DNA from: Scyliorhinus canicula
Taxonomy: Eukaryota
NCBI RefSeq assembly: GCF_902713615.1
Contig: NC_052158.1
Coordinates: 30,421,990-30,485,989, forward strand
DNA: 64,000 nucleotides
Reading direction: 5' to 3'
The first letter of the stretch is position 1, and every line of letters starts with the position of its first letter. Made by a program: the position numbers and the translations under genes. This document shows, piece after piece, positions 15,852-64,000 of this stretch. The notes beneath the pieces were generated by a model, which did not search any database, had not been told where the DNA came from, and saw only the letters and a list, made by a program, of their open reading frames with translations.

Positions 15852-15956
15852 TTAACCACAGGCAGTCTTGTCCTTATCTATGGAAGTTCGAAGTGTTCGC
15901 TTCCCTTCTCTGAAGATCAGTGTACAATACTGCACATTATCTGCTTCATTTGCCTG
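15852..15956 (-). CDS. NCR3: NCR3-like exon 5: terminal cytoplasmic exon with ITIM VQYCTL
   Basis: Acceptor tttttttcttccag|, phase 0, QANEADNVQYCTLIFREGKRTLRTSIDKDKTACG*, TAA at 15852-15854. Confidence 0.8.
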   Translation of the reverse strand, partial: QANEADNVQYCTLIFREGKRTLRTSIDKDKTACG

Positions 15957-31048: not shown

Positions 31049-31383
31049 ACCATGAAGCTGGGATTTTCGCAGTTATTCAAAACGCGACCAGTATTCTGGC
31101 TGAGGAAGGACAGACTCCCTTGTGAGTACACAGCCCACGCCTCCAAAGCGATAGGATCTTCTAGCCGGTAGAAAGACGCGAGAAATGGAACTGAAGTATC
31201 CAACAGAACAGCTGCGCACAGAGGGCGGGTCCACAGGGTCAACCAGGATTTTGCCAGAACCGGAGACGCGTCCATTCTCATCAAAGATGTTCGAGTGAAG
31301 AATTCCGGGGTGTATAACTGTGAAGTGGCGATGATGCAGCTGGGTATGGAATTATGGAGCAGAGACACATCTCACCGCGAGAA
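31049..31383 (+). pseudogene. NKp30-like VJ-type V pseudo-exon, copy A
   Basis: Acceptor ttttttcgtttccag|; reads DHEAGIFAVIQNATSILAEEGQT/PCEYTAHASKAIGSSSR*KDARNGTEVSNRTAAHRGRVHRVNQDFARTGDASILIKDVRVKNSGVYNCEVAMMQLGM/YGAETHLTAR|gtaaac; 8-nt deletion, WY->R* and 1-nt insertion relative to copy B. Confidence 0.85.
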
Positions 31384-32519: not shown

Positions 32520-32817
32520 GAATTGCAGTTATTCAAAGGTTAGCCACCATTCTGGCTGAGGAAGGCCAGACAGTATTTCTCCCTTGTGAGTACACAGCCA
32601 ACGTCTCCAAAGCGAAAGGATCTCCTCGCTGGTACAAAGACGGGAAAAATGGTACAGGGGCGGGTCCACAGTGTCAACCAGGTTTTTGCCAAAACCGGTG
32701 ACGCCTCGATTTTCACCAAAGATGTTCGAGTGTAGGATTCCTGGGTGTATTACTGCGAAGTGGTGATGATACAGCGGGGTGTGGAATATGGAGCAGGAAC
32801 AGATCTCACCGTCAGAA
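32520..32817 (+). pseudogene. NKp30-like VJ-type V pseudo-exon, copy B
   Basis: Acceptor gtttctcttttccag|; reads GIAVIQRLATILAEEGQTVFLPCEYTANVSKAKGSPRWYKDGKNGT/GRVHSVNQVFAKTGDASIFTKDVRV*DSWVYYCEVVMIQRGVEYGAGTDLTVR|gtaagc; 29-nt deletion and TAG stop; downstream intron (about 250 nt) homologous to that of copy A. Confidence 0.85.
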
Positions 32818-34840
32818 GTAAGCCATTCGGCTACATCAATTAGCATGAGATCGAGAGGTGGGAAATCCGACCCTTTAATATTCTGCTCTTATTTCCGACT
32901 GCACCTAAGTCAGAACGGCTTCAAGCGGTAATTTCCCATTCTGGAATCCCAGCTCAGCTCCATTGAGGAAACATTTTAATCATTTAAAATTACCGGGATT
33001 CTGACCAGGAATTAATTCGACTTTTTTGACGGTACATAACAAGCGAGGTAGCATTTAACATAACACTGAAAGCAAAATGTTGCGGAGCTAAGAATCTGAA
33101 ATGAAATCAGATACTGCTCCGGAAACGCGGCACGTCTGGTGGCATCTGGGGAGAAACAAAAATGTTAACTTATCGAGTCTGCCTGACTCTTCTTCAATGC
33201 CTTTCTTCATAGATTCCAGCGCCCCTTAAGCTATTTTTACTCTCTCTCTTGCGATGAGTACAGCTACAACAAGAGTCAAGAAACTAGACTCCATCCAGGA
33301 GAAAACAGCCCGCTTGATTGGCACCCCAGTTAGAAACATTGACTCCCTCCACCACCGGTGCACAGTGGCACCACTGTGTACCATCTACAACATGCACTGC
33401 AGCTCACAGAAGCTCCTTCGTCAGCACTTTCCAAACCCGCGACCTCTACCACCTGGTGTTGTATTCACGTTTTAATAGTGAGTGTGTTGTGGACAATGGC
33501 GCTATCAGCGGCTCAGACGATTTTGGGGAGGAGAAGGTCACGCAGTAGCTTAAAAATGGGCACTAAAACAAGGCTTTTAGAATTGGCAAAAAATATTGCA
33601 GGTAACACTGCCTGACAAAGTACGGAAAGAAGAGGTAATTGCGGCGGTAGCTGAACATTTAAACTTGCCTGAGACACAGTCAGACTCATTAGAAATGGCA
33701 AGAATTCAATGACAGATAAAGCATCTTGAACATGAAAAATAATTAAAGAAGCTTGAATTCGAAATGAGAGAAAAGGAGAGAGAGGAAAGCGAAAACGAAA
33801 GAATAGCCCTAGCAGAACAGAAAGCAAGAGAAAGGGAGGAACAAACAGCACAAGGAATGAAACTGCTTGAGGAACAGATCAGGGGGGAAAAAAAGAGAGA
33901 GACTTTGAACTTCAAACTGACCATTAAAAGTGAACGTCAGATAAAATTGTCGGAGAGCTTCGTAGTCGAAGGCATAGTGAGGATCTATTTAAATATGTCC
34001 AAGCATTGCCAAGGATTGATAAGAAGGATGGAGAAGCCTTTTTCATTTTATTTTTGAAGTTGGTTAATCAATGAAATGGCCACAGGACATGTGGGTATTA
34101 CTGATTCAAACAAAGTTGGTAGGTAGAGCTAGTGAAGTTTTTGCATCACTGTCAGAGGAGGTATCTGGGACGTATGAGGAGGTGTAAAAAATTCATCTTA
34201 GATGCATATGAACTAGTGCCTGTAGCTTACAGACAATGGTATAGAGATTTAAGGAAAGAACCTGGTCAAACATACAAAGCGTGAAAGGATCAAACAGAAA
34301 GATTTTGACAAGTGTAGAAGGGCTTTGAAAATAGACCAAACTTATGAAGCTCTTAAATAAATCATAATTTTGGTGGAGTTTAAAAGTTCAATTACTGATG
34401 TAGTGAGAACTCATGTGGAAGAGCAGAGGGTTAAAACTGCGAGTTAGCAGCACAAGTGGCAGATCTTCATGAATTAATTCATCAATCAAAGTTTGGCTTC
34501 CGATATCAGTTTAAGCCTATGAGGGTTAGAAACTGTGGAAGAGAGAAATACTCCGCTGGTAAAGGAGATCTAATGGGAGATGATAAGGTTAGTGTACCTC
34601 AGAATGAAATGAAATCCAGGAGGGTGGAAGGGAATGAAAAGTTTCAGAAGTTTTTACTGTAATAAACTAGGCCACATAAAGTCAGAGTTTTGGGCGTTTA
34701 ATAAAAGCACTGGGAAGGTTGATGTGGTAATACAGGATATGCCAGTGGGATTTTTTAAAGTGGAAATAGAAAGCCCAATTAAAGCGAAGGAGGTGCAAAC
34801 GAACATACAGCCTGACCAAGAGCTGATTAATAAGCAGGTG

Positions 34841-39159: not shown

Positions 39160-40480
39160 TACAATCACAATGGGATATTATAGATGCCTGCAAACAGAAT
39201 AGTCCAGGTAGATTGGCAGGACATTAATAACGGTGCAAAGTGGGATGATCAGCGTGTTCCGTGACATCTTGAGCTGTATTGAGAAATCATGAACAAAATG
39301 AAAACTTGAGATATACATTCCACAGATGAAGGGAAAAGCAACAATGAAGATTGACTTTTTGTGAATGAGGAAGACGTGGAGACTTTATAAGAGAGGTAGG
39401 CAGCCTACGGGGAGCTAGATGCATATTGAAGTAAGATAGTTTGAAAGCGACACTGAGTAGGTGGATGGTAATTCTCATAGAGATCGTGAAACTGATGACA
39501 GGTTGGGTCAACAGAGGCATATAGGCAGGTTGAGTGATTGAGCAGAGATTTGGCAGATACCATAGAATGTACAGTACAGTGCAGAAGGACGCCGTTCGGC
39601 CCATCGAGTCTATACCGGCCCCTGGAACGAGCATCCCACTTAAGCCAACACTTCCAACCTATCCCCACAACCCAGTAACTCTAGTTAACATTTTTGAACA
39701 CTAAGGGCAATTTAGCGTGGCCAACCCACCTAAACTGCACATCTTTGGACTTTGGGAGGAAACCAGAGCACCCGAGGAAACCCATGCCGACACGGGGGAA
39801 CGTACAGACTCCACGTAGACAGTAACCCAAGCTGGGAATCGAACCTGGGATCCTGGAGCTGTGAAGCAACTGTGCTAACCACTGTAGTGCCGTGCTGCCA
39901 AGATGGAATATAGTGTAGGAAAATGAGTGTATGCACTTTGGTAGGAAGAATACAGGAGTTGTACATTATTTAAAAAAGGAATAACTGCAGAAAGCTGAAG
40001 CACGGAGGCTGTAGCAGAAATCACAAAAAGCTAGCATACGTTCAGCAGGTAATAAGGAAGATAAATGAAAATGTGGCGTTCTTTTCAAATGGAATGGAGT
40101 ATAGAAATAGGGATCTCGGCAAAATCTACATAAGGCATTAGTTCACCCCTTCCTGGAATATTGTGAACAGTTTTGTTCTCCTTATCTTAGGAAATATATA
40201 CTGGCATTGGAAGCAGTTCAGAGAAAGTTCGCCAAGTTTATGCTGGGCATGAAGGGTTTTTTAATTAGAGGTTGAGAAGGATGGGCTTGTACTCATTGGC
40301 GTTTAGAAGAATGGGAAGGGACCTTACGGAGATCAACAGGATTGTCAGGGAGCTAGACAGGGTAGATGCTGAGGTTGTATCCCCTTGTGGGAGAGTCCAG
40401 GATCGGAGGGCATAGGGTAAACAGGAGGAAACAGGGAGCACATATAGAGGAGAGGAAACAGGAAGCAAGTATATACGAGA
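39160..40480 (+). mobile_element. Degenerate CR1 RT 3' region, interrupted by an HE1 SINE (39560-39900, minus strand)
   Basis: LEYCEQFCSPYLRKYILALEAVQRKFAK motif; SINE homology. Confidence 0.7.
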
Positions 40481-41030
40481 GGAAACAGGAAGTGAAGATA
40501 GATGAGACGAAACAGGAATCAAATGTAACGGAGAGGAAACAGAAAGCAAAGATAGACGGGAGGAAACAGAAAGCAAAGATAGACGGGAGGAAACAGGAAG
40601 CAATGATATACGGGAGGAAACAGGAAGCAATGATAGACGGGAGGAAACAGGAAGAAATGATATACGGGAGGAAACAGGAAGCAATGATATACGGGAGGAA
40701 ACAGGAAGCAATGATATACGGGAGGAAACAGGAAGCAATGATAGGTGGGAGGAAACAGGAAGCAATGATATACGGGAGGAAACAGGAAGCAATAATAGGC
40801 GGGAGGAAACAGGAAGCAATGATAGGCGGGAGGAAACAGAAAGCAATGATAGGCGGGAGGAAACAGGAAGCAATGATAGACGGGAGGAAACAGGAAGCAA
40901 TGATAGGCGGGAGGAAACAGAAAGCAATGATAGACGGGAGGAAACAGGAAGCAATGATAGGCGGGAGGAAACAGGAAGCAATTATAAGCGGGAGGAAACA
41001 GGAAGCAATGATATACGAGACATTAAACAA
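40440..41030. repeat. 27-bp minisatellite gggaggaaacaggaagcaatgata(t/g)(a/g)c, about 21 copies
   Basis: Direct inspection; explains the repetitive ORFs 40366-41043 (+), 40265-40981 (-) and 40353-41054 (-). Confidence 0.95.
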
Positions 41031-46700: not shown

Positions 46701-49249
46701 TTTATGCCTCTCTTATATCAAGCTCAGCTAAAATCAGATGACGCACACTAGTTAGACTTCAGACAGAAGAATACAATTTGCCCCTTTTGCCTCTAATCAG
46801 GCTTCAGGTGATTGACAGGTAACTGCCGCTCAGATATGTGGGTGGGGCAGCTCCTTTTTTTGCCAGCTAACTAGACCATTAAATTTATAACTGGAAAAAC
46901 AGGAGAATTAGATTTACCACATACCTGTTTAGTTACCAGCCTGCTCCAGATTACCAACTTTCAATCCCCACCCTGGCTGCCTCACGCAGGATGCTCCAAC
47001 GTCACGTGCGCAAAGCTTACTCTATGCCTGCCGAGAATGTCAAGTGGAAATGAACTGATTGAAGCACGCTTGGCAGTTTCAAAACATGAAATTGGTATAT
47101 CTGGAAAATTATTTATTTTCCGTTTGTTTTCGGCCGATACACTGGTGTTTTTCCCCAATTTGCTTTAGGTGGCGGATTAACCCCCCCCCCCTCCCCAAAC
47201 ACGTGCCACAACAGACGAAGCCAACGATATTTCATCACCAAAACATTTATGTTTTACAAATAATACACTGATTTACAGATATCAGGCTGATTGGAACAGC
47301 AAAGGACTTTGAAATTAGAGAGAGATAACTTTTATTTAAGTGCTGTCCTCGGTGGAAGTAAAGCGCTTTGAGGGGCACTGGGGTCGTGACAGGCGCATGA
47401 TCAAGACATTTTTTGTTTTGTTTTACAAAGGGTGAAATAAAATCAAATTAGTGGTGACTTAACGCAATCTTTGAAATTATGAAAGATTCACTAATAATCG
47501 AGGAGGAAATTCTGGAAAAACGTCTTTACCAAAGAGTGGTGGGATGTTTTTAAATTATACATTTCCAGGATGTGGGCTTCACGGGCTAGGCCATCGTTTA
47601 TTACCCAGCCTAATTGTCCTTGAGAAGGTGGTGGTGAGCTGTCTCCTTGAACCCCTGCAATCCATATGGGGCAGGTGCATCCAATGTTCCGTTTGGGAGG
47701 GAGCACTCGGATTTTGACCCAGACACAGTGAAGGAACGACGATATAGTTCCCAATCAGGATAGTGATTAACCTGAAGGGGAACCTCCAGGTGGTGGAGTT
47801 CCTAGGTCTCTGCTGCCCTTGCCCTTATAAATGTTCGCTGTCTTGTGTTTGGAAGGTGCTGTCAATGGAGCTTTGGTGAGTTCCTGCAGTGCATCTTGCA
47901 GATGGTACACAGGGCTGCAACTGCACGTGGGTGGCAGAGGGAGTGAAAAATTAGAGATGAGGTGACAATAAAGTGGGGCTGCTTTGTCCTGGATGGGGTC
48001 AAGCTTCATGAACGGTATTGGAGCTGCACCCATCCAGGCAAGTGGATTGTGAAATTCGGTTCCACGTGGCCTAGATAGGTAAATTATATAATTGCATTAA
48101 AGGGAAATTAGATAAGAACTTGTGAAAAGGGGGAATAGATGGTTAGGATGCTCGATTCAGATGGGAAATGATATTAAGAGCGTTTAATAGAGTATTGACA
48201 CCGGCACGGAATGCCTGCATCGAATGGCCTGGCACTGTTCCGCGCATCATCATGCGTAATCCTGTGTCATCTTGAAAAATGAAACCGGAACTGGTTTCAT
48301 AAAGTCTGACATCAGACCGGACTTTCTCATGGGCCTCTGAGTTTAAAATTGCAGATTGGTTTCCAGATCTTCATTGCCACATCCATCGGCCACTGCAGCA
48401 AACTCTTCCGAATTTGTTCCATTTCCCTGCGGAGATTATGACAGGAAAATCATTTTGCACAATCAACTCAGTAAACAACCCAGCATGAATACTGTTTTTT
48501 TTTAAAGTCTTCCACTTAAATATCATCCTATAACTTTCAAGCTTAACACGCCAAGGAGCTTATTTTCATTACAAACTTCAAAGGCTATTCAATGATTGCT
48601 TCCACATCTTAATAAGCAATAAGACAGCCTCGCCTGCACAATGGTCTGCAGAGGGACCTGCTCCACATTTGTGCATTTCTTTTACCCTTCGCTTCATGTC
48701 AAGCATCTGGGAGAGCCACAAATTGTACATTGCTGAATTGTTTGCTATGTTGACCCACGTCCAATTTGGTTGGTTTTGTTGGCAATAAATATGGAAAGTT
48801 GCTGACACGCATATTTATTACAAATAATATAAAACACGTTCTGACGAGGCTGCACGAATTCTGTCTTGTGGCGCAGTGGGTACTCTTCCTACATCTGGAA
48901 CAGAAGTTACGAGTTCAAGTCCCGCCACAGGAATTGATGGCCATGGTTGATTAGCAGCCGGAAAATCCTCCCATTCCCCTGATGGCAGGCGGAAAAGAGC
49001 TGGAGAGTTTACTGTACAGCCGTGCTGCAGAAGGGAACTGCAAACCACTGCTGTGCTTTGTCAAACATAACCATAAAACAATCCAATGGAAGTCCGCCGA
49101 TGATGAGGACATGGTGCCTGACGGAGGAGGAGGTACCAATGCCACATGGTCACCAGGTGATGGATGCTGAGCTCTCTTCAGTTTTTTCCATTTGACCTAA
49201 ATCCACCTTTACCAAATCTCTCAGTTTCCTATAACACAATCATGAAAGA

Positions 49250-49680: not shown

Positions 49681-51724
49681 AACTAGTTTCTAAATTAATC
49701 GAGTCAAACCCTGACCTGATAGTCCAACCGCTGACCACTGCCCCGTACAGAAGTGCCAAATATCAATTAGACGCTAATTTTTAACTTGTGCTGGTTCCTA
49801 TGAGTGAAGTTAAATATCGGGTTGCTTTACATAAGTGAAGGGCACAAGTATTGCTCTCTTACCTCATTTACTGAAATGTTTTCCAGTTGAGGATAACGTT
49901 TCGCTGTGAAGTAAACAAGAGGATTGCGTGTAAGTAGCATCATATCTTAACCCTACAAGGGAACAGTCTGAAAATATTTATTTCAGGCATTAATCTATTT
50001 AACCGTGCAATGATGTATTGAAAATAAAGTATACATTGTATATAATAAGCCAGAAGTCTGCTCCTGGTCATTCACAGGTAACTTGTTCATTAAAGTTTGC
50101 TTGCACTGTTGCAGGGAAAGAGATTATGAATGGGCCTAATTGGCCAGATCTTTCAAAGCAAAAGCATTTGGTACAATGTACAGAATGAGCCCCTTCTCTG
50201 CTTTTTAATTGCACGACAGTAGCAAGCTCATGAGAACAGAACTTCCTCCGATTCCCCTGCAAGGCAGGCGTAATCTATTTAGACATATGTCACTAGGCGA
50301 GACATCCAGGCTAATGCTCTGGGGAAATGGGTTCAAATCCAACTTTGGAAACTGGCAGAATTTAAACTCAAGTAATAAAATCTGGAATTAAATGCTTGTC
50401 TCGGTAATAGCGACGCTGGACCATCTGTCAACAGTCACAGAAAACCATTTGTTTCATTAATGTCCCTTAAGGATGGAAATCAGCCATCCTGACCTGGTCC
50501 AGCCTACATTGTGACTCCAGACCCACATCAGTAATGTGGTTGGCTCTTAACTACCCTCTAAAATAGCCTTGCAAGTCACTAGGTTCCAGCGTAATTCACA
50601 AATGGTGAATCAATGCTGGCCTTGACATCCCGCATGAACAAATAAATATATACATATTATTTTCATGCTTGCTGGGTCAAACTCCCCATATTACCTATCC
50701 AACACCATTTTGAGAGAACTATCACATCAGCTACCGTTATCCTCTGTTCTCAGAGCGACTAGAGTTGGTAATAAGTGCTGACCGGTTTACTTTACATGCA
50801 TCACAAAAAGGATTTCAACAATCACAAAGTTTTCAGATGGAAAATGTTAATTTCGCAGTGGTGATGATAGAGAAACTGCTCACTTCATCATCTCCATTGT
50901 TGCTTCACTGAAACTGACAATAAAGTCAGAAATGTACAGAATAAGATGGAAGAGCAGATATCGCTGCAGCTAATTCTACACTTCTCCAGATGATATCTTG
51001 ATTAAGACACAAAAGCTGTAATCGATTTGAAATCTCTGAACTGGCAAGAAGTTCCATTCTCATACTACTGTATTAGTCCAATCGAAAAAACCCTTGAAAA
51101 TTTACACATAGTTCAATGGAGCTTGCAATTGGCTTCATCTTGGCACTATATTATTCGGCAAGAAAACTTTACATTGTGGAATCTCAAACTTCTGTATTAT
51201 AATAAAACAACCACATATATTTAAAACATATTTTAAACTGTATATCTTAATTTTAACTTTTACAGTAATCCAATCTTGATTTATTTATTTTGCAAGCAGA
51301 ATTATCAACTTAAAGATAAATGGATTCAGTCATTTTACATTCCACGATTGCTGTCTGTGAGAATGATTCAGTTTGATTGGTTTGTTCCGATGCTTGCTGA
51401 CACCATCGATGCTGAATGCCTGGAGATCCCTTTGACTTAGCACCATATGCAAAGTGACAGAGAACATCACAGAGATTCGTACATCTAGAAATATCGCTTT
51501 GCAGGGGGCAAAATCGAAGTTAATTACTTACATGCTAAAGTCACACAGCATAAGTTGCCCAGAGTTATCTTTAGACAAACCTCCGCTCAGCATTCCTGGT
51601 CAACATTTTTATTTCAGCCTCCAGTTGTTTTATGCCTCTCTGAGTTATATTGGGAACGAGGGTCAAATGGTTTCAAATTACAGACCGTTTTCTGGTCCAA
51701 GAAGATGGCCGCTAAACTCCGTTT

Positions 51725-56244: not shown

Positions 56245-57915
56245 CTAGATAGATAGATAGTGAAATACAGCACAGAACAGGCCCTTCGGCCCATGATGTT
56301 GCGCCGAACTTTTGTCCTAGGTTAATCATAGAATTTTGGACAATTTTTCATGGCCAATCCACCCAACCTGCACATCTTTGGACTGTGGGAGGAAACCGGA
56401 GTACCCGAAGGAAACCCACGCAGTCACGGGGAGGATGTGCAGACTCCACACAGACAGCGACCCAAGTCGAAATCCAACTTGGGACCCTGGAGCTGTGATG
56501 CAATTGTGCTATCCACAATGCTACTGTGCTGCCCTTAAGAAGTTAACCTACACTCCATTATTCTACCCTAATCCATGTACCTATCCAATAGCCGCTTGAA
56601 GGTCCCTAACTTTTCCGACTCAACTACTTCCACAGGCAGTGCATTCCATGCCCCCACTGCTCTCTGGGTAAAGAACCTACCTCTGACATCCCCTCTATAT
56701 CTTCCACCATTTATCTTAAATTTATGTCCCCTTGTAATGGTGTGTTCCACCCGGGGAAAAGGTCTCTGACTGTCTACTCTATCTATTCCCCTGATCATCT
56801 TATAAACCTCTATCAAGTCCCCCCTCATCCTTCTCCGTTCTAATGAGAAAAGGCCTAGCACCCTCAACCTTTCCTCGTATGACCTACTCTCCATTCCAAG
56901 CAACATCCTGGTAAATCTCCTTTGCACCTTTTCCAAAGCTTCCACATCCTTCCTAAAATGAGGTGACCAGAATTGCACACAGTACTCCAAATGTGGCAAA
57001 ATGAGGTGACCAAGGTTTTGTACAGCTGCATCATCACCTCACGGCTCTTAAATTCAATCCCTCTGCTAATGAACGCTAGCACACCATAGGCCTTCTTCAC
57101 AGCTCTATCCACTTGAGTGGCAACTTTCAAAGATCTATGAACATAGACCCCAAGATCTCTCTGCTCATCCACATTGCCAAGAACCCTACCATTAACCCTG
57201 TATTCCGCATTCATATTTGTCCTTCCAAAATGGACAACCTCACACTTGTCAGGGTTAAACTCCATCTGCCACTTCTCAGCCCAGCTCTGCATTCTATCTA
57301 TGTCTCTTTGAAGCCGCCAACAGCCCTCCTCACTATCCACAACTCCACCAATCTTCGTATCATCTGCAAATTTACTGACCCACCCTTCAACTCCCTCATC
57401 CAAGGCGTTAATGAAAATCACAAACAGCAGAGGACCCAGAACTGATCCCTGCGGTACGCCACTGATAACTGGGCTCCAGGCTGAATATTTTCCATCCACC
57501 ACCACTCTCTGTCTTCTATCGGTTAGCCAGTTTGTTATCCAACTGGCCAAATTTCCCATTATCCCATGCCTCCTTACTTTCTGCATTAGCCTACCATGGG
57601 GAACCTTATCAAATGCCTTACTAAAATCCATGTACACTACATCCACTGCTTTACCTTCATCCACATGCTTGGTCACCTCCTCAAAGAAGTCAATAAGACT
57701 TGTAAGTCAAGACCTACCCCTCACAAATCCGTGCTGACTATCCCTAATCAAGCAATGCCTTTCCAGTTGCTCAGAAATCCTATCCCTCAGTACCCTTTCC
57801 ATTACTTTGCCTACCACCGAAGTAAGACTAACTGGCCTGTAATTCCCAGGGTTATCCCGATTCCCTTTTTTGAACAGGGGCAGGACATTCGCCACTCTCC
57901 AATTCTCTGGTACCG
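56245..57915 (-). mobile_element. Young 5'-truncated CR1 LINE (near-intact RT) with an internally deleted HE1 SINE embedded in its 3' UTR
   Basis: ORFs 57707-57895, 56864-57676 (VYMDFSKAFDKVPH, GVPQGSVLGPLLF, FADDTK) and 56568-56999; SINE head and body at 56325-56535 between the RT stop and the terminal gggccgaagggcctg stem. Confidence 0.9.
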
Positions 57916-58944: not shown

Positions 58945-59205
58945 GCATTACGGTAGCACAAGTGGATAGCATTGTGGCTTCACTGCACCATGGTCCCAGG
59001 TTCGATTCCCTGCTGGGTCACTGTCTGTGTGGAGTCTGCACGTTGTCCCCGCGTCTGCGTGGGTTTCCTCCGGGTGCTCCGGTTTGCTCCCACAGTCCAA
59101 AGACATGCAGGTTAGGTGGATTGCCCATGATAAATTGTCCTTAGTGACCAAAAAGGTTAGGAGGGGTTACTGACCTCCTTCTGCACTGTATGTTCTATAT
59201 TCTAT
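58945..59205 (+). mobile_element. HE1-type SINE with internal deletion
   Basis: tRNA head, body and tail homology. Confidence 0.8.
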
Positions 59206-61232
59206 GTGTATAATAGGGGAAACTGATGGGAAACTAATCGGTCTGCCCAAGTCGAAATTCCATGACAATAAAGGGTCTCAAATACTTACGATCATTTGGG
59301 AGGAATAAAGTCATATTCAGTTAGCCAGTGCTTGTCTCAGATTCAGGAGGTTACAAGAGAAAAGTCAGACACAACAAACCACCCCCCGGTTACCCAAAGG
59401 TCGGTAATTTGCTGCGTTATTCACCTGTTATGTTAAGTTCGTCGTATCCATAATCATGTCTGCAAAAAAGGGAGACATTTTACATGCATTGAGAATTAAA
59501 TGCCTGCTAAGAAATAGGTTTAATTTGATAGCTTCCAACAAGTTTGATATAAACAAATGCATTTTATGTTGTCTAAGCCTCCACCTCCACCCATATTATT
59601 TTTTTAATAAACTATGCATTTCAACGGGGTATTATTAAGAAATCCTGGTGAGACTGTTAGCAATACGAAGACAACCCCAGTTACGCTGTTTAAATCTGCA
59701 TGTGGATAATATACACTATTGTCCTTTCCTGTAGCCATCGGCAATATCGACCTCATCTGTATCCCACAATATCATGCAAGGTTACTTTGGCTGGTAACAT
59801 GAAAAAATACTGGCTGAATTTTGGAAAGTTCCCAAGGAGGCCCTTTTTAGACTTCGATTTTCAGATAACCTAATCAAGTTGCAGTAGGGATGGAACCGAA
59901 GGTTGTTAAAATGACTTTCCTCAGCTGGCCTTACAGCAGTCCTTATATTGAGTTTAGGTATCTTTGCATATAACTTGCATAAAAGATTGCACTGACAACA
60001 AACCATCCTGATGCCTGTCCACCATCTACAAGGCACAAGTCAGAAGCGTGGTGGAACGCTTTGCATTTGGCTGGATGAGTGCAGCTCCATCAACAATGGG
60101 GGGGGGGGGGGGGGAGGGGGGAGTAGTGGGGGGGGCGTGATATTACAGGCTACTTAAGAATATCACTCACCAGCCTGATTCGGAAATATATCGTTCGCCC
60201 TTCACTGTCGCTGGGGCAACATCCTGGAATTCCCTTCCTAACAGCACAGTGGGTGTATCTACATCTCAAGGACTGCAGCGATTAGGAAGGCAACTCACCA
60301 CCACTTTATGAAGGGCAACTAGGTATGTGCAATAAATGCTGGCCTAACTTGCGACGCCCACATCCCGTAAATGATTTTTTTTTAATCATCCGGATCGCTG
60401 GATTAAAATCCTGAAACTGCTTATCTAGCATCACTTTGGGTGGGTCAAACAACCCAGGGGCTGCAGTAGTTCAAGAACGTGGCACATCAGTTATTTCTCA
60501 GGCGTAAATAACGATGGACACTAAAAGGTGGCCTTGCCCGGGTTTCTCCAATCGATTGAATAAAAGAAATGCTAACCGATGCTCTATCTGCATATAGCAA
60601 AGAGAGTAAACATATTTTAATTAATTGATACCGGATATATTTCTCAATTTATGGAATTATGTGCCAGCAAATTCCACTAATAGGAATGGCATTTTGGAAT
60701 TGGATGCACCTCTGGACTAACCAATAACTTGAGATGCTGATCAAATGCTATTGCGTTAAATTGAAAGGGGTGCGCGCGGAGCGGCGGTCTGGGCGTTGAG
60801 GTCAATGGGTCAGATAGATTCAGCTTCTTTTTTAAAATAACTGGTCCAGTTGACTCTGCTACCAGGGCAGACGGACAAGACTGAGCTGAAGACGTTTGGC
60901 TAGTTCCCTCACAAAGGGAACTTTCAATTATCGGCGATAGTCTTGAGTGTCAGAGGCAGCAATGCCATTTATATTAAAGAAATCGCATGCTTGGATTGAT
61001 TACTAGAATTTGAGGGATATCGACAACTTACATTGAAATGAATTCGAGAGAGTAACTCTTTCCGATAAAGAGATGCAGATTTAATGCACAAAAGGCAAAT
61101 GTGTGGTTTTATTTTCTTACACTTCTGCGCATCTCCTGGAATCTCCGGTAAAATATTTCATGTGATTTCTTTCTGCAGTCTTAGCCTGACCATGGATAAC
61201 ATTGAAGTGGCCCCTGGGCTATACTTATACTC

Positions 61233-61437: not shown

Positions 61438-62027
61438 TATACTTATACTCAACTGCAGGGGTCAGTATGGTTGGGAGTGTCAACCCAGATTTATTTCCAG
61501 GTGCTCGGCTCGTACCACAGCTCAGGTCTGTTTTCATCCCTATTTTCCCTGACCACATGGGTTCCAGGACTTCAATCTGCTAATTCGAAGTGTGGGTCAG
61601 TGGAACACTGATAGTTTTTGCTTCGAAACAATTGAGGAAGAATCCAAGTTTATTTAATTGACAATCGATTGTAATCCCGCTGTTTTCGCGCGTTGGCATC
61701 GGTCCAAAGAATATTATGTCCGAGTAACAAACTAAATCCAGTCCGCCATTCCTTATCCACAGCTTGTCACAAAAATTAATATTGCCACACGTACTTGGAC
61801 TTGGGTTAAAATCACCATTACAAAAAACAAGCTATTTTGACGGGAAGTGCGTGTCCAGCAGAATTTTTCAATCTATATATAAAGGAACTTAACTCTGTAA
61901 ATCCATTATTTTACTTTGCTGGGGAATAAAGATTTATTTCTGACCTTTAGGAAACTGTGATTGGAAATTAGTAACTGAAATGAGCATATCTGAAATGTGA
62001 TTGGTTGCATGAAGAGAAAGTAATGAC

Positions 62028-62126
62028 TCACTCTGAATCGTCGCGTTCCACAATTACCAGAGAAGACGATTGCTTTAAAAGATCCAACTTTATCGTCGCG
62101 TACTGTACATACTCTATTGCAGTAGT
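62028..62126 (-). CDS. Terminal ITIM exon TTAIEYVQYATIKLDLLKQSSSLVIVERDDSE* of a second receptor gene
   Basis: Acceptor ctaatcttcctgtttttacag|, phase 0, 99 nt, VQYATI aligns with VQYCTL of gene 1; the TGA overlaps a possible ga|gtgagt donor, so the exon may not be terminal. Confidence 0.7.
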   Translation of the reverse strand, partial: TTAIEYVQYATIKLDLLKQSSSLVIVERDDSE

Positions 62127-62254
62127 CTGTAAAAACAGGAAGATTAGATTAGTCTAGATTGGCATGGTGCATCTTCAGGAACCTCGCGTTCATCAGTTGA
62201 TGTTTCTGCAAAAGATCAGCTATTCTATCTCTTTAAACTGGGATTAAGTACCAC

Positions 62255-62450
62255 AGAACATAGAATCATAGAATTGCTACAGTGTAGAAGGAGGCTATTC
62301 AACCCATCACGTCTGTACTGACCCTCTGAAAGAGCACCCTACCTAGGCCCCATTCCCCCTCCCTATCCCCATAAACCTACCGAACCAGCACATGTTTGGA
62401 CACAGGGGCAATTGAGCATGACCAATACACCGAGCCCACACATCTTTGGT
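62255..62450 (-). mobile_element. Diverged HE1-type SINE 3' half
   Basis: Tail and body homology. Confidence 0.6.
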
Positions 62451-62850
62451 GTGAGACTTTGGAGAAAATAAATAAGCAGACTATGCAATCAAACTCTGAA
62501 GCATAGGTGAACTCAAACACGGTCCGGATGTATGTTTGCAGAGACCTTGGGGGGGGGGGGGGGGTTCATAACCAATAAACATTTGGTCTTCTTCCATCTT
62601 GTACTCCTTTACAATTCTTAACATCTCGTAGTCGTAAAAGTGAAATGTATAATTCCTATCGATCGACATAGATAATTGTTAAAGATACCAATCTATTAAA
62701 TCTATCCATGCTGCAGTTACCAAATTGTGTTCTGTTCCAGTTGCTACTGTAGAAAGCATGATATGGAATTTGGGGAATGAAATGTATCTCTTCGGTCTTC
62801 TATAACCTGAGACTTCGAAACAATTGCACTTCATTTATATTGCTGCTTAC

Positions 62851-62885
62851 CTCATTCTGTGAATTGTGTAGAGAACTTTGGGAAT
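62851..62885 (-). CDS. Cytoplasmic micro-exon (D)SQSSLHNSQNE of a second ITIM receptor gene
   Basis: cattacatttgtacttgtag| ... gag|gtaagc, 35 nt, phase 1->0, the same architecture as exon 4 of the NCR3-like gene. Confidence 0.65.
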
Positions 62886-64000
62886 CTACAAGTACAAATG
62901 TAATGGAGCGAAATGTCAGTGAAGTGAAATTCAATAAGGTGCAGCATAATATTCAAAGCGATTGATTGATGTTTGATGAGTGACGCTCAGACATATCGAT
63001 ATGTAGAAAAATAACTAATTTATTTGAGGGATAGCACAGGTATTCAATCGCAGATCAGATTCGAGAGGTTGAATGGTAGTTTCTGTTTCTATCACGTCTG
63101 GTCATGTTTCGCAGTGTCTCCGAGGTTCTTCTCATAGAGCTGATTACTTTGAGTGCATGATGAGCATGAATGTTAACAAACCAACACGGTTCCAGAAACA
63201 GCAAACAGCAATCAGCTAAATGACGAATAGATCATTTGTTTGTATATTTGTGTCTGTCGGTGTGTTTCAATAAACAGTATTAGAAAGTATACTGACATAA
63301 CGTCTTGCTGATTTGTCAAGGAGCTAACTCTAACCTGGACAAGCCGGTATGGCGAGGAAATCTGGCAATGCTGTGCTCCACCCCTGCTACAGGAAGGCGC
63401 CATCATCTATTAAACTCTTGAAGTTAAACTTTGATCTATTTTGCTCCGGAAGCAAGCGCATCAACAATTGAATCGAAGTAACACAAGACAGGGCGACTAG
63501 GGGATTTTCACAGTAACTTAATTGCACTGTTAATGTCAACCTACTTCTGACAGTAATATATTATTATTATTGACTACTATTATTGAGAGACACTTATTTG
63601 TGCAAAGTCCAACTGACATTCATTTGAAACTAATAATAGCTGGATTACTTCATGAAAGCTAATGGGTAAAACAGCAAGCGCAGTCCTTTCATACCAACTA
63701 AATTAGCGATCACCAATGACCAAGCTGCATTGATAAAATCGTCACAAGTTTCTGGAATCAGCATTAATTAAAACTTGCACATATAGACAGATAGGTTTTA
63801 TAACTGTAGATAGATGTTGTGCTCGCTCTCGTGAAGGACTCTTCCGTTACTTGCGCGAGGTCCAATGTAGCATGGGCGCAAAAAGAGCTCCAGAAAAGAT
63901 CTCCCGTGTAAAATTTCCATTTCCCGGAACTGATATCTCATCACAGGACAATGATCCGATAGCGCAGTCGATTCTGCTTAATTTCCTGCGGGGAGAGCAG

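What the first reader, a model, noticed from the sequence alone, without database searches (positions are those of the whole stretch)
62028..62885. Second ITIM receptor tail with the same two-exon architecture as gene 1
Seen: a 35-nt phase 1->0 exon (DSQSSLHNSQNE|gtaagc) followed by a phase-0 exon TTAIEYVQYATIKLDLLKQ...ERDDSE*, mirroring gene 1 (41-nt phase 1->0 exon, then VQYCTL...DKDKT). Neither exon appears in the ORF track. A phase-1 acceptor at about 62223 (ETSTDEREVPEDAPCQSRLI*) could be an alternative ending. No clean TM or V exon was found in 62.9-64 kb.
Basis: partly seen in the sequence, partly recalled or inferred. Interest (0 to 1): 0.7.

Follow-up and report, generated by a model that had tools for sequence, protein, structure and literature searches.

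The report
Inner tail exons of shark NKp30-like gene
The two small coding pieces are real and are spliced together as predicted, but they are middle pieces, not the end, of the tail of an annotated but unstudied catshark immune-receptor gene related to human NKp30.

Summary
The two minus-strand exons exist. Their predicted junction (62851/62126) is present in assembled transcript contigs of two runs. They belong to LOC119975535 (XP_038671255.1, "uncharacterized protein", small-spotted catshark), a 44-kb gene on the same chromosome as gene 1.

The "two-exon terminal tail" reading is wrong. The supposed TGA stop lies inside a GTGAGT splice donor. Contigs from three runs (two studies) stop matching exactly at 62032, and one of them (run X2) visibly continues at 59459. 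Five exons in the window reproduce the last 96 residues of the RefSeq protein exactly:
- A: 62885-62851
- B: 62126-62032
- C: 59459-59425
- D: 49903-49863
- E: 48426-48343

The protein has two V domains whose best solved-structure matches are human NKp30.

Relatives in four sharks (great white, zebra and two horn-shark genes) and one ray keep three tail motifs:
- YxxM
- a canonical ITIM (VQYATI here, in exon B)
- an acidic DxGY(D/E)EL motif 28-29 residues after the ITIM tyrosine

All these relatives have a membrane-spanning segment. The only catshark model has none, and the DNA that could settle this lies beyond 64000.

The alternative ending near 62223 has no read depth and no homologue.

Verdict: a real, ordinary member of the published shark NCR3 family. 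The scan had also noted this gene from the neighbouring window (s1-253726).

The parts
62851..62885 (-). Exon A: 35-nt internal coding micro-exon, phase 1->0, encodes (D)SQSSLHNSQNE = residues 292-303 of XP_038671255.1.
   Evidence: AG acceptor and GTAAGC donor. Joined to 62126 in contigs of X2 and X3. Exact match to P0005.
62127..62850 (-). Intron of 724 nt between exons A and B.
   Evidence: Skipped in the contigs, with CT..AC ends on the + strand, which is GT..AG on the minus strand.
62032..62126 (-). Exon B: 95-nt internal coding exon, phase 0->2, encodes TTAIEYVQYATIKLDLLKQSSSLVIVERDDS(E).
   Evidence: Contig pieces of X1, X2 and X3 all end at 62032. Exact match to P0005 residues 304-335.
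62091..62108 (-). Codons of the canonical ITIM, V-Q-Y-A-T-I.
   Evidence: Fits (S/I/V/L)xYxx(I/V/L). The homologous position is IQYASI, VQYATL, IQYATI, IQYTEI and IQYAVI in five elasmobranch relatives.
62026..62031 (-).
   Evidence: Sequence. The contigs leave the genome here, and the X2 contig's continuation resumes at 59459.
59425..59459 (-). Exon C: 35-nt coding micro-exon, phase 2->1, encodes HDYGYDELNIT. This is the invariant acidic YxxL motif.
   Evidence: The 30-nt continuation of the X2 contig maps here with no mismatch. AG acceptor and GTGAAT donor, exact match to P0005. If the donor is not used, the frame ends ...NITGE*.
49863..49903 (-). Exon D: 41-nt coding micro-exon, phase 1->0, encodes (A)KRYPQLENISVNE.
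   Evidence: tblastn match at 100% identity. Canonical splice sites.
48343..48426 (-). Exon E, coding part: GNGTNSEEFAAVADGCGNEDLETNLQF followed by the stop.
   Evidence: tblastn, sequence, exact match to the C-terminus of P0005.
48141..48342 (-). 3' UTR of exon E. Its extent is inferred, not shown. ATTAAA starts at 48188.
   Evidence: Run X2 holds 0.88 of the sampled words of 48100-48430, and three more runs of the same study hold 0.88-1.00. The 362 nt that the X2 contig carries past 62032 equal 35 + 41 + 286 nt, which would end near 48141.
62144..62205 (-). Not supported.
   Evidence: Zero depth in bin 62172-62255 in all four runs. No meaningful similarity to any relative.

Best explanation
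The finding is two internal coding exons of the catshark gene LOC119975535. This gene is a member of the shark NCR3 (NKp30) family with two tandem NKp30-like V domains and a long tail assembled from many micro-exons.

Exon A is a spacer. Exon B carries the single canonical ITIM (VQYATI) and the start of an acidic stretch. Exon C completes that stretch into the invariant motif DYGYDEL. Exons D and E finish the protein.

In the membrane-anchored form seen in other sharks and a ray, I infer the following. Ligand binding by the V domains lets Src-family kinases phosphorylate the tail tyrosines. The ITIM, together with the tyrosine fixed 28-29 residues downstream, then docks SH2 phosphatases (SHP-1/SHP-2 or SHIP) and dampens activation. 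The upstream YTPM could recruit PI3K.

Shown here: the exons, their splicing, their expression and the conservation of the motifs. Inferred: the membrane topology in catshark, phosphorylation, and the binding partners.
For: Splicing and gene model:
- The A-B splice joint stands in contigs of two runs. The match ends at 62032 in three runs from two studies.
- The X2 contig's continuation is located at 59459.
- The five exons, all with canonical sites, reproduce residues 292-387 of XP_038671255.1 exactly.
- The gene spans 44,106 bp on the same 163-Mb chromosome as gene 1.
- The terminal exon is held by four runs of study P2. Their contig totals are 137-298 M letters, against 1356-1905 M for the DNA runs, which suggests they are transcriptomes.

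Family:
- Both V domains hit human NKp30 structures first: E 3e-15 and 1e-12, against 6e-08 and 1e-08 for the next family.

Conservation:
- Relatives in Carcharodon, Stegostoma, Heterodontus (two genes) and Mobula keep YxxM, the ITIM and D.(G/E)Y(D/E)EL at homologous positions.
- The spacing between the two tyrosines is constant at 28-29 residues.
- All of these relatives have a strong hydrophobic segment between the V domains and the tail.
Against: - The only catshark protein model has no transmembrane segment: best 19-residue hydropathy is 0.75, against 2.5-2.8 in the orthologues. In that isoform the tail would be secreted with the V domains and an ITIM could not work.
- I could not read the DNA beyond 64000 (one search returned no DNA) to see whether a TM exon exists.
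- Runs X2 and X3 are not on record as RNA.
- The one run on record as RNA (X5, oligo-dT, a third of it read) gave no read on any of these exons.
- The distal motif looks more like an activating hemITAM than like a second ITIM.
- No phosphorylation or binding data exist.
Confidence: 0.6

Rival explanations
1. The tail ends with these two exons: exon B is terminal, translation stops at TGA 62030-62028 (...ERDDSE*), and the architecture copies gene 1.
For: The TGA is in frame directly after ...DDSE. If the intron were retained, this stop would be used. An AATAAA lies about 90 nt downstream.
Against: - Contigs from three runs stop fitting at exactly 62032, and the X2 contig is seen to go on to 59459.
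- Depth is zero in bins 61668-62003 in all runs.
- RefSeq splices here.
- The residues after the junction (HDYGYDELN.TAKR) are the best conserved part of the whole tail in five relatives.
Confidence: 0.04
2. In catshark the gene makes only a TM-less, secreted two-V-domain protein, a soluble decoy or a copy on its way to decay. The conserved tail motifs would then be inherited baggage with no signalling role in this species.
For: - XP_038671255.1 goes from the V2 domain (...GTHLIVK) straight to DVQLSQRQDTV. It omits exactly the block that holds the TM segment in the orthologues.
- No hydrophobic segment is present.
- It is the only catshark protein with this tail found in the length range that could be searched.
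- Dead NKp30-like V exons lie nearby at 31-33 kb.
Against: - The reading frame is intact through at least five micro-exons.
- All three tyrosine motifs are unchanged from those of species that have the TM segment.
- In gene 1 the TM exon is 123 nt, phase 1->1. Skipping such an exon keeps the frame, which is what an alternative soluble isoform or a predictor's omission would look like.
- A single Gnomon model is weak evidence of absence.
Confidence: 0.2
3. The tail is not purely inhibitory. The invariant acidic D.GY(D/E)EL motif works like a hemITAM (Syk recruitment) and YTPM recruits PI3K, so the receptor activates, or switches between activation and inhibition.
For: - The motif has Gly at -1 and acidic residues upstream: DDGYDEL in Mobula, HDYGYDEL in three sharks.
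- This is the layout of the Dectin-1 hemITAM, DEDG-YxxL. There the DEDG sequence is reported to contribute to activating signalling (PMC12669754).
- It is the most conserved block of the tail.
- Mammalian NKp30 is an activating receptor (PMC12272517).
Against: - Known hemITAMs sit in N-terminal tails of type II C-type lectins, not after an ITIM in a type I Ig receptor (my own knowledge).
- The fixed 28-29-residue distance from the ITIM tyrosine fits the spacing of tandem phosphatase-docking tyrosines in KIR-, LILRB- and SIRP-type receptors (my own knowledge).
- There are no functional data.
Confidence: 0.16

Closest known systems
Shark NCR3 (NKp30) family genes (Kinlein et al. 2021, Immunogenetics 73:333; Flajnik et al. 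2012, Immunogenetics 64:571). Both are cited in PMC12227049 and PMC12272517. I could not read the papers themselves.
   Same: - Non-rearranging V domains with a J-like Y-G-x-G-T motif.
- Best solved-structure match is NKp30.
- A multigene cluster in elasmobranchs. Gene 1 in this window is annotated NCR3-like, and further copies were noted 86 and 110 kb before the window.
   Different: - Two or three tandem V domains instead of one.
- A roughly 150-residue tail of many micro-exons with three conserved tyrosine motifs.
- All members found are annotated 'uncharacterized protein' or misnamed 'turtle homolog B-like'.
- I could not check whether this subtype is one of the eight published nurse-shark subtypes.
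Human NKp30 (NCR3)
   Same: V-domain sequence family (E 3e-15).
   Different: - Human NKp30 has one V domain, an arginine in the TM segment that pairs with CD3-zeta or FcR-gamma, and a short tail (my own knowledge).
- Here the orthologues' TM segments carry Glu, Gln or no charged residue and no Arg, and the tail has its own tyrosine motifs.
Gene 1 of this window (NCR3-like isoform X2, XP protein P0001, 22878-15852 minus)
   Same: - NKp30-like V domain, same strand and chromosome.
- ITIM VQYCTL against VQYATI.
- In both, the ITIM exon starts in phase 0 and is preceded by a micro-exon in phase 1->0 (41 nt against 35 nt).
   Different: - Gene 1 has one V domain, a TM exon, and only two tail exons with the ITIM exon last.
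- Gene 2 has two V domains and at least three exons after the ITIM exon.
- V domains are only 33% identical.
- The tails show no detectable similarity outside the motif.
Tandem-tyrosine inhibitory Ig receptors (KIR2DL/LILRB/SIRP-alpha/PECAM-1 type)
   Same: A type I Ig receptor (in the orthologues) with a canonical ITIM and a second conserved tyrosine at a fixed distance of 28-29 residues.
   Different: - The second motif is not an ITIM or ITSM: position -2 is Tyr, Asp or Phe.
- The V domains are of NKp30 type.
- There is no sequence relationship of the tails to these families.
hemITAM of Dectin-1 / CLEC-2 (DEDG-YxxL)
   Same: Acidic residues and Gly directly before YxxL (PMC12669754).
   Different: Different protein class and topology. 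Here the motif follows an ITIM. No evidence of Syk binding.

Membership tests
NCR3 / NKp30 family | V-set Ig domain most similar to NKp30 among known proteins | tested here: met
   P0005 residues 18-130 and 129-236: the four NKp30 structures rank first (E 3e-15 and 1e-12). The next families score 6e-08 (TCR V-alpha) and 1e-08 (pIgR). Pfam V-set E 1.8e-24.
NCR3 / NKp30 family | VJ-type domain: J-like G-x-G motif at the end of the V domain, encoded in the germline without rearrangement | tested here: inconclusive
   The motifs YGAGTWLTV and YGVGTHLIV are present in P0005. The V exons of this gene lie outside the window, so single-exon coding could not be checked. For gene 1 it is met: V exon 21846-21508 includes YGQGTTLIVT.
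NCR3 / NKp30 family | Single V domain, and a TM segment with a basic residue for pairing with CD3-zeta/FcR-gamma (mammalian type) | tested here: not met
   Two V domains in catshark, two or three in Carcharodon and Heterodontus. No TM segment in P0005. The orthologues' TM segments have Glu, Gln or no charge.
NCR3 / NKp30 family | Linkage to the MHC and binding of a B7H6-type ligand | not testable with these tools
   The chromosome context beyond the window is not available. No binding test was done. MHC linkage of NCR3 in elasmobranchs is stated in PMC10751288 and PMC12227049.
ITIM-bearing inhibitory receptors | Consensus (S/I/V/L)xYxx(I/V/L) | tested here: met
   VQYATI at P0005 residues 310-315 (window 62108-62091). 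It is conserved at the homologous position in five relatives. The consensus alone is weak: 231 chance matches in the window.
ITIM-bearing inhibitory receptors | The motif lies in the cytoplasm, downstream of a transmembrane segment | tested here: inconclusive
   Met in Carcharodon, Stegostoma, Heterodontus and Mobula (hydropathy 2.5-2.8). Not met in the only catshark model (0.75). The DNA that could hold a TM exon was not readable.
ITIM-bearing inhibitory receptors | Tyrosine phosphorylation and recruitment of SHP-1/SHP-2/SHIP | not testable with these tools
   Needs biochemistry.
hemITAM receptors | A single YxxL preceded by an acidic stretch and Gly, in a Syk-coupled C-type lectin | tested here: not met
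   The motif layout is similar (DDGYDEL / HDYGYDEL). The protein is an Ig-superfamily molecule, not a C-type lectin. Syk coupling is untested.

The most novel reading that the evidence does not exclude
Elasmobranchs keep a distinct NKp30 subfamily with two or three tandem V domains. Its micro-exon tail carries a fixed three-tyrosine module: YxxM, then an ITIM, then a hemITAM-like acidic GY(D/E)EL 28-29 residues later. This would be a signalling cassette not described for any NKp30. It could let one receptor switch between inhibition and activation. Catshark may also make a TM-less secreted form by skipping the TM exon.
Probability: 0.25. Interest if true: 0.5.

Novelty: new member of a known kind. 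Interest (0 to 1): 0.3.

Why it matters
NKp30 is described as the one natural-killer receptor that can be traced across jawed vertebrates, and it is discussed as a relative of the ancestor of antigen receptors (PMC10751288, PMC12227049).

This work shows that the catshark cluster holds, besides the small one-V ITIM gene, a larger tandem-V gene. The tail motifs of that gene are conserved across sharks and a ray. That gives a concrete set of tyrosines to test for how primitive NKp30 receptors signalled.

For the scan itself, the practical lesson is that an in-frame TGA followed by GT can be a GTGAGT donor rather than a stop. It also shows that micro-exon tails cannot be closed from sequence alone.

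Tried and rejected
- Searching with gene 1's V domain to find gene 2's protein found only gene 1 and its orthologues.
- For a moment I read the upstream loose end of the X2 contig as putting a stop in every frame. The cause was the single G that matches 62886 by chance: the joint's 'side' is 36, not 35. With that G the frame agrees with RefSeq.
- Fetching the gene's DNA beyond 64000 failed (no DNA, file too large). The findings tool does not accept places beyond 64000.
- The upstream exon (...TFSNSMGNLM) is not in the window on either strand.
- Rfam found nothing in the window.
- Looking for similarity between the two genes' tails and ITIM exons gave nothing at protein or DNA level.
- The alternative ending at about 62205 has no depth and no homologue.
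- The papers on shark NCR3 (PMC8273117, PMC3709836, PMC4594805) are not held.
- A text search for the tail motifs found no paper.
- Raw oligo-dT RNA run X5 showed reads only on two short dispersed repeats, none on the exons. That is no evidence of silence, because the tissue is unknown and only a third of the run was read.

Full report
**What the window is.** A neighbouring LINE reverse-transcriptase fragment and the protein matches place the window in the small-spotted catshark, Scyliorhinus canicula. Gene 1 lies on the minus strand at 22878-15852. It has a leader, a V exon, a TM exon, a 41-nt exon and an ITIM exon. It is the annotated "natural cytotoxicity triggering receptor 3-like isoform X2".

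**Checking the observation.** On the minus strand, 62885-62851 is a 35-nt stretch between ...ttgtag and gtaagc. After the acceptor ...ttttacag, 62126 onward reads TTAIEYVQYATIKLDLLKQSSSLVIVERDDSE followed by TGA. So the letters are as described. An ITIM consensus is no evidence by itself, because it occurs 231 times in the six-frame translation of the window.

**Read evidence.** I laid three contig-type runs and one raw RNA run on 61500-64000.
- The joint 62126<->62851 skips 724 bases, with GT..AG on the minus strand. It stands in a 574-nt contig of X2 (depth 80) and a 440-nt contig of X3 (depth 7).
- Flanking intron sequence appears in X2 only at depth of about 6.
- These runs have 137-298 million letters of contigs, against 1356-1905 million for the DNA runs of the species. 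I take them to be transcriptomes, although they are not on record as RNA.

**The second exon is not terminal.** The contig pieces of X1, X2 and X3 (two studies) all stop fitting at 62032, four bases before the end of the supposed stop. The X2 contig carries 362 more letters.
- Its first 30 letters beyond that point map without mismatch to 59459-59430 on the minus strand, directly after ...ttttttgcag.
- The letters at 62031-62026 are GTGAGT, so the TGA is part of a consensus donor.
- At the other end the X2 contig carries 81 more letters beyond 62886. These are not in the window.
- With the single G that happens to match 62886, the frame reads ...TFSNSMGNLM|DSQSS.

**Which gene.** An exhaustive search with the 41-residue open frame around exon B found one protein, P0005 (E 1.4e-09).
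- It is XP_038671255.1, "uncharacterized protein LOC119975535", 387 residues.
- The gene spans 44,106 bp on the same 163-Mb chromosome as gene 1.
- Five minus-strand exons in the window, all with AG/GT sites, reproduce its last 96 residues exactly:
  - A: 62885-62851, 35 nt, phase 1->0
  - B: 62126-62032, 95 nt, phase 0->2
  - C: 59459-59425, 35 nt, phase 2->1
  - D: 49903-49863, 41 nt, phase 1->0
  - E: 48426-48343, 84 nt including the stop
- X2 holds 0.88 of the sampled words of 48100-48430, and three other runs of its study hold 0.88-1.00.
- 35 + 41 + 286 = 362, so the X2 contig probably follows the RefSeq splicing to about 48141. That last step is inference.

**What the protein is.** P0005 has a signal peptide and two V-set domains (Pfam E 1.8e-24). 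Each V domain ends in a J-like YG.GT motif.
- For both V domains the best solved-structure matches are the four human NKp30 entries (E 3e-15 and 1e-12). The next families follow at 6e-08 and 1e-08.
- A roughly 150-residue tail follows the V domains.
- Searches with the tail and with an alignment found relatives in Carcharodon carcharias, Stegostoma tigrinum, Heterodontus francisci (several genes), Rhincodon, Chiloscyllium and the ray Mobula hypostoma.

**Conserved tail motifs.** In the six full tails, three motifs sit at homologous positions.
- IY(T/I)PM, which is a YxxM motif.
- A canonical ITIM: VQYATI, IQYASI, VQYATL, IQYATI, IQYTEI and IQYAVI.
- D(Y/D/F)(G/E)Y(D/E)EL, with its tyrosine 28-29 residues after the ITIM tyrosine.

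**The open problem.** All these relatives have a strongly hydrophobic segment between the last V domain and the tail (19-residue hydropathy 2.5-2.8).
- P0005 has none (0.75). Its sequence passes from ...GTHLIVK directly to DVQLSQRQDTV, omitting the whole TM block.
- In gene 1 the TM exon is 123 nt and phase 1->1, so skipping such an exon keeps the frame.
- The catshark model may therefore be a soluble splice form, a predictor's omission or a real loss.
- The DNA that would decide this lies beyond 64000 and could not be fetched.
- A note from the neighbouring window (s1-253726) describes a tail of eight micro-exons reaching to about 75.5 kb. This agrees with what I see at my end. I could not test it beyond the window.

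**Mechanism.** Shown: the exon structure, the splicing, the presence in transcript-like contigs and the conservation. Inferred from general knowledge of ITIM receptors:
- In the membrane form, the ITIM is phosphorylated and recruits SH2 phosphatases.
- The fixed 28-29-residue spacing to the second tyrosine is in the range of tandem docking sites of KIR/LILRB/SIRP-type receptors.
- Against a purely inhibitory role: the distal motif has Gly at -1 and acidic residues upstream, like the Dectin-1 hemITAM (DEDG-YxxL; PMC12669754). YxxM is a PI3K-type motif.

- The alternative ending is really at 62205-62144. It has zero depth in all runs and no homologue.
- "No TM or V exon in 62.9-64 kb" is right: the next upstream exon is outside the window.
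- The similarity to gene 1 is limited to the local phase pattern and the VQY.T(I/L) motif. No other protein or DNA similarity between the tails was found, and the V domains are 33% identical.

**Known or new.** The shark NCR3 family is published (Kinlein et al. 2021 and Flajnik et al. 2012, as cited in PMC12227049 and PMC12272517). I could not read those papers, so I cannot say whether this tandem-V, three-tyrosine subtype is among the eight nurse-shark subtypes. A text search for the motif strings found nothing. The gene itself is already in RefSeq, unnamed. I rate it a new, uncharacterised member of a known kind, of modest interest.

Noticed in passing
window 31055-31351 and 32522-32831, + strand: Two NKp30-like V exon remnants with in-frame stops. 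They are closer to gene 2's V1 (51-53% identity) than to gene 1's V (about 36%). A possible TM remnant follows at about 32880-32906.
   Followed up: partly
window 48296-48364, minus strand (end of exon E and start of the 3' UTR): In a frame shifted from the annotated one, GNQSAILNSEAHEKVRSDVRLYE matches the white-shark protein's C-terminal extension (65% identity, E 4e-05). The two species therefore end this protein in different frames of homologous DNA. Heterodontus shares the catshark frame (CGNEDL...).
   Followed up: partly
P0017 (Heterodontus francisci): A predicted protein joins a gene-2-type V domain and TM segment to a gene-1-type ITIM tail (NQANEVDYVQYSALNFNERERKPRSSIDKDK). This could be exon sharing or read-through between neighbouring NCR3-family genes, or a predictor's chimera.
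   Followed up: no
orthologues P0007, P0008, P0009, P0013: The TM segments of several orthologues hold a conserved glutamate (VVELGLL, LIELALL, AGEIGIF, AVEVGIL), which is Gln in Mobula and the whale shark. An acidic residue in the TM segment of an ITIM-bearing receptor is unusual and may point to a partner chain.
   Followed up: no
window 62311-62353 and 63492-63536: Two short cores of 40-45 nt have summed contig depths of thousands to tens of thousands in every run, at 95-99% identity. They are pieces of dispersed repeats (SINE-like) transcribed in many places, not part of the gene.
   Followed up: no
window 40424-41017: A 27-bp tandem repeat of 22 copies at 89% match, open in several frames. 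It lies downstream of the gene's 3' end.
   Followed up: no
window 56568-57676, minus strand; about 58980-59230: A LINE reverse-transcriptase fragment (two overlapping open frames of 143 and 270 aa) lies in the 9.5-kb intron between exons C and D. A tRNA-derived SINE-like element lies just downstream of exon C.
   Followed up: no
window 15953-15956, minus strand (gene 1): Tandem cag|cag acceptor. My splice gives ...NDNQQANE, while the RefSeq isoform X2 has ...NDNQANE. This is a NAGNAG alternative acceptor.
   Followed up: no
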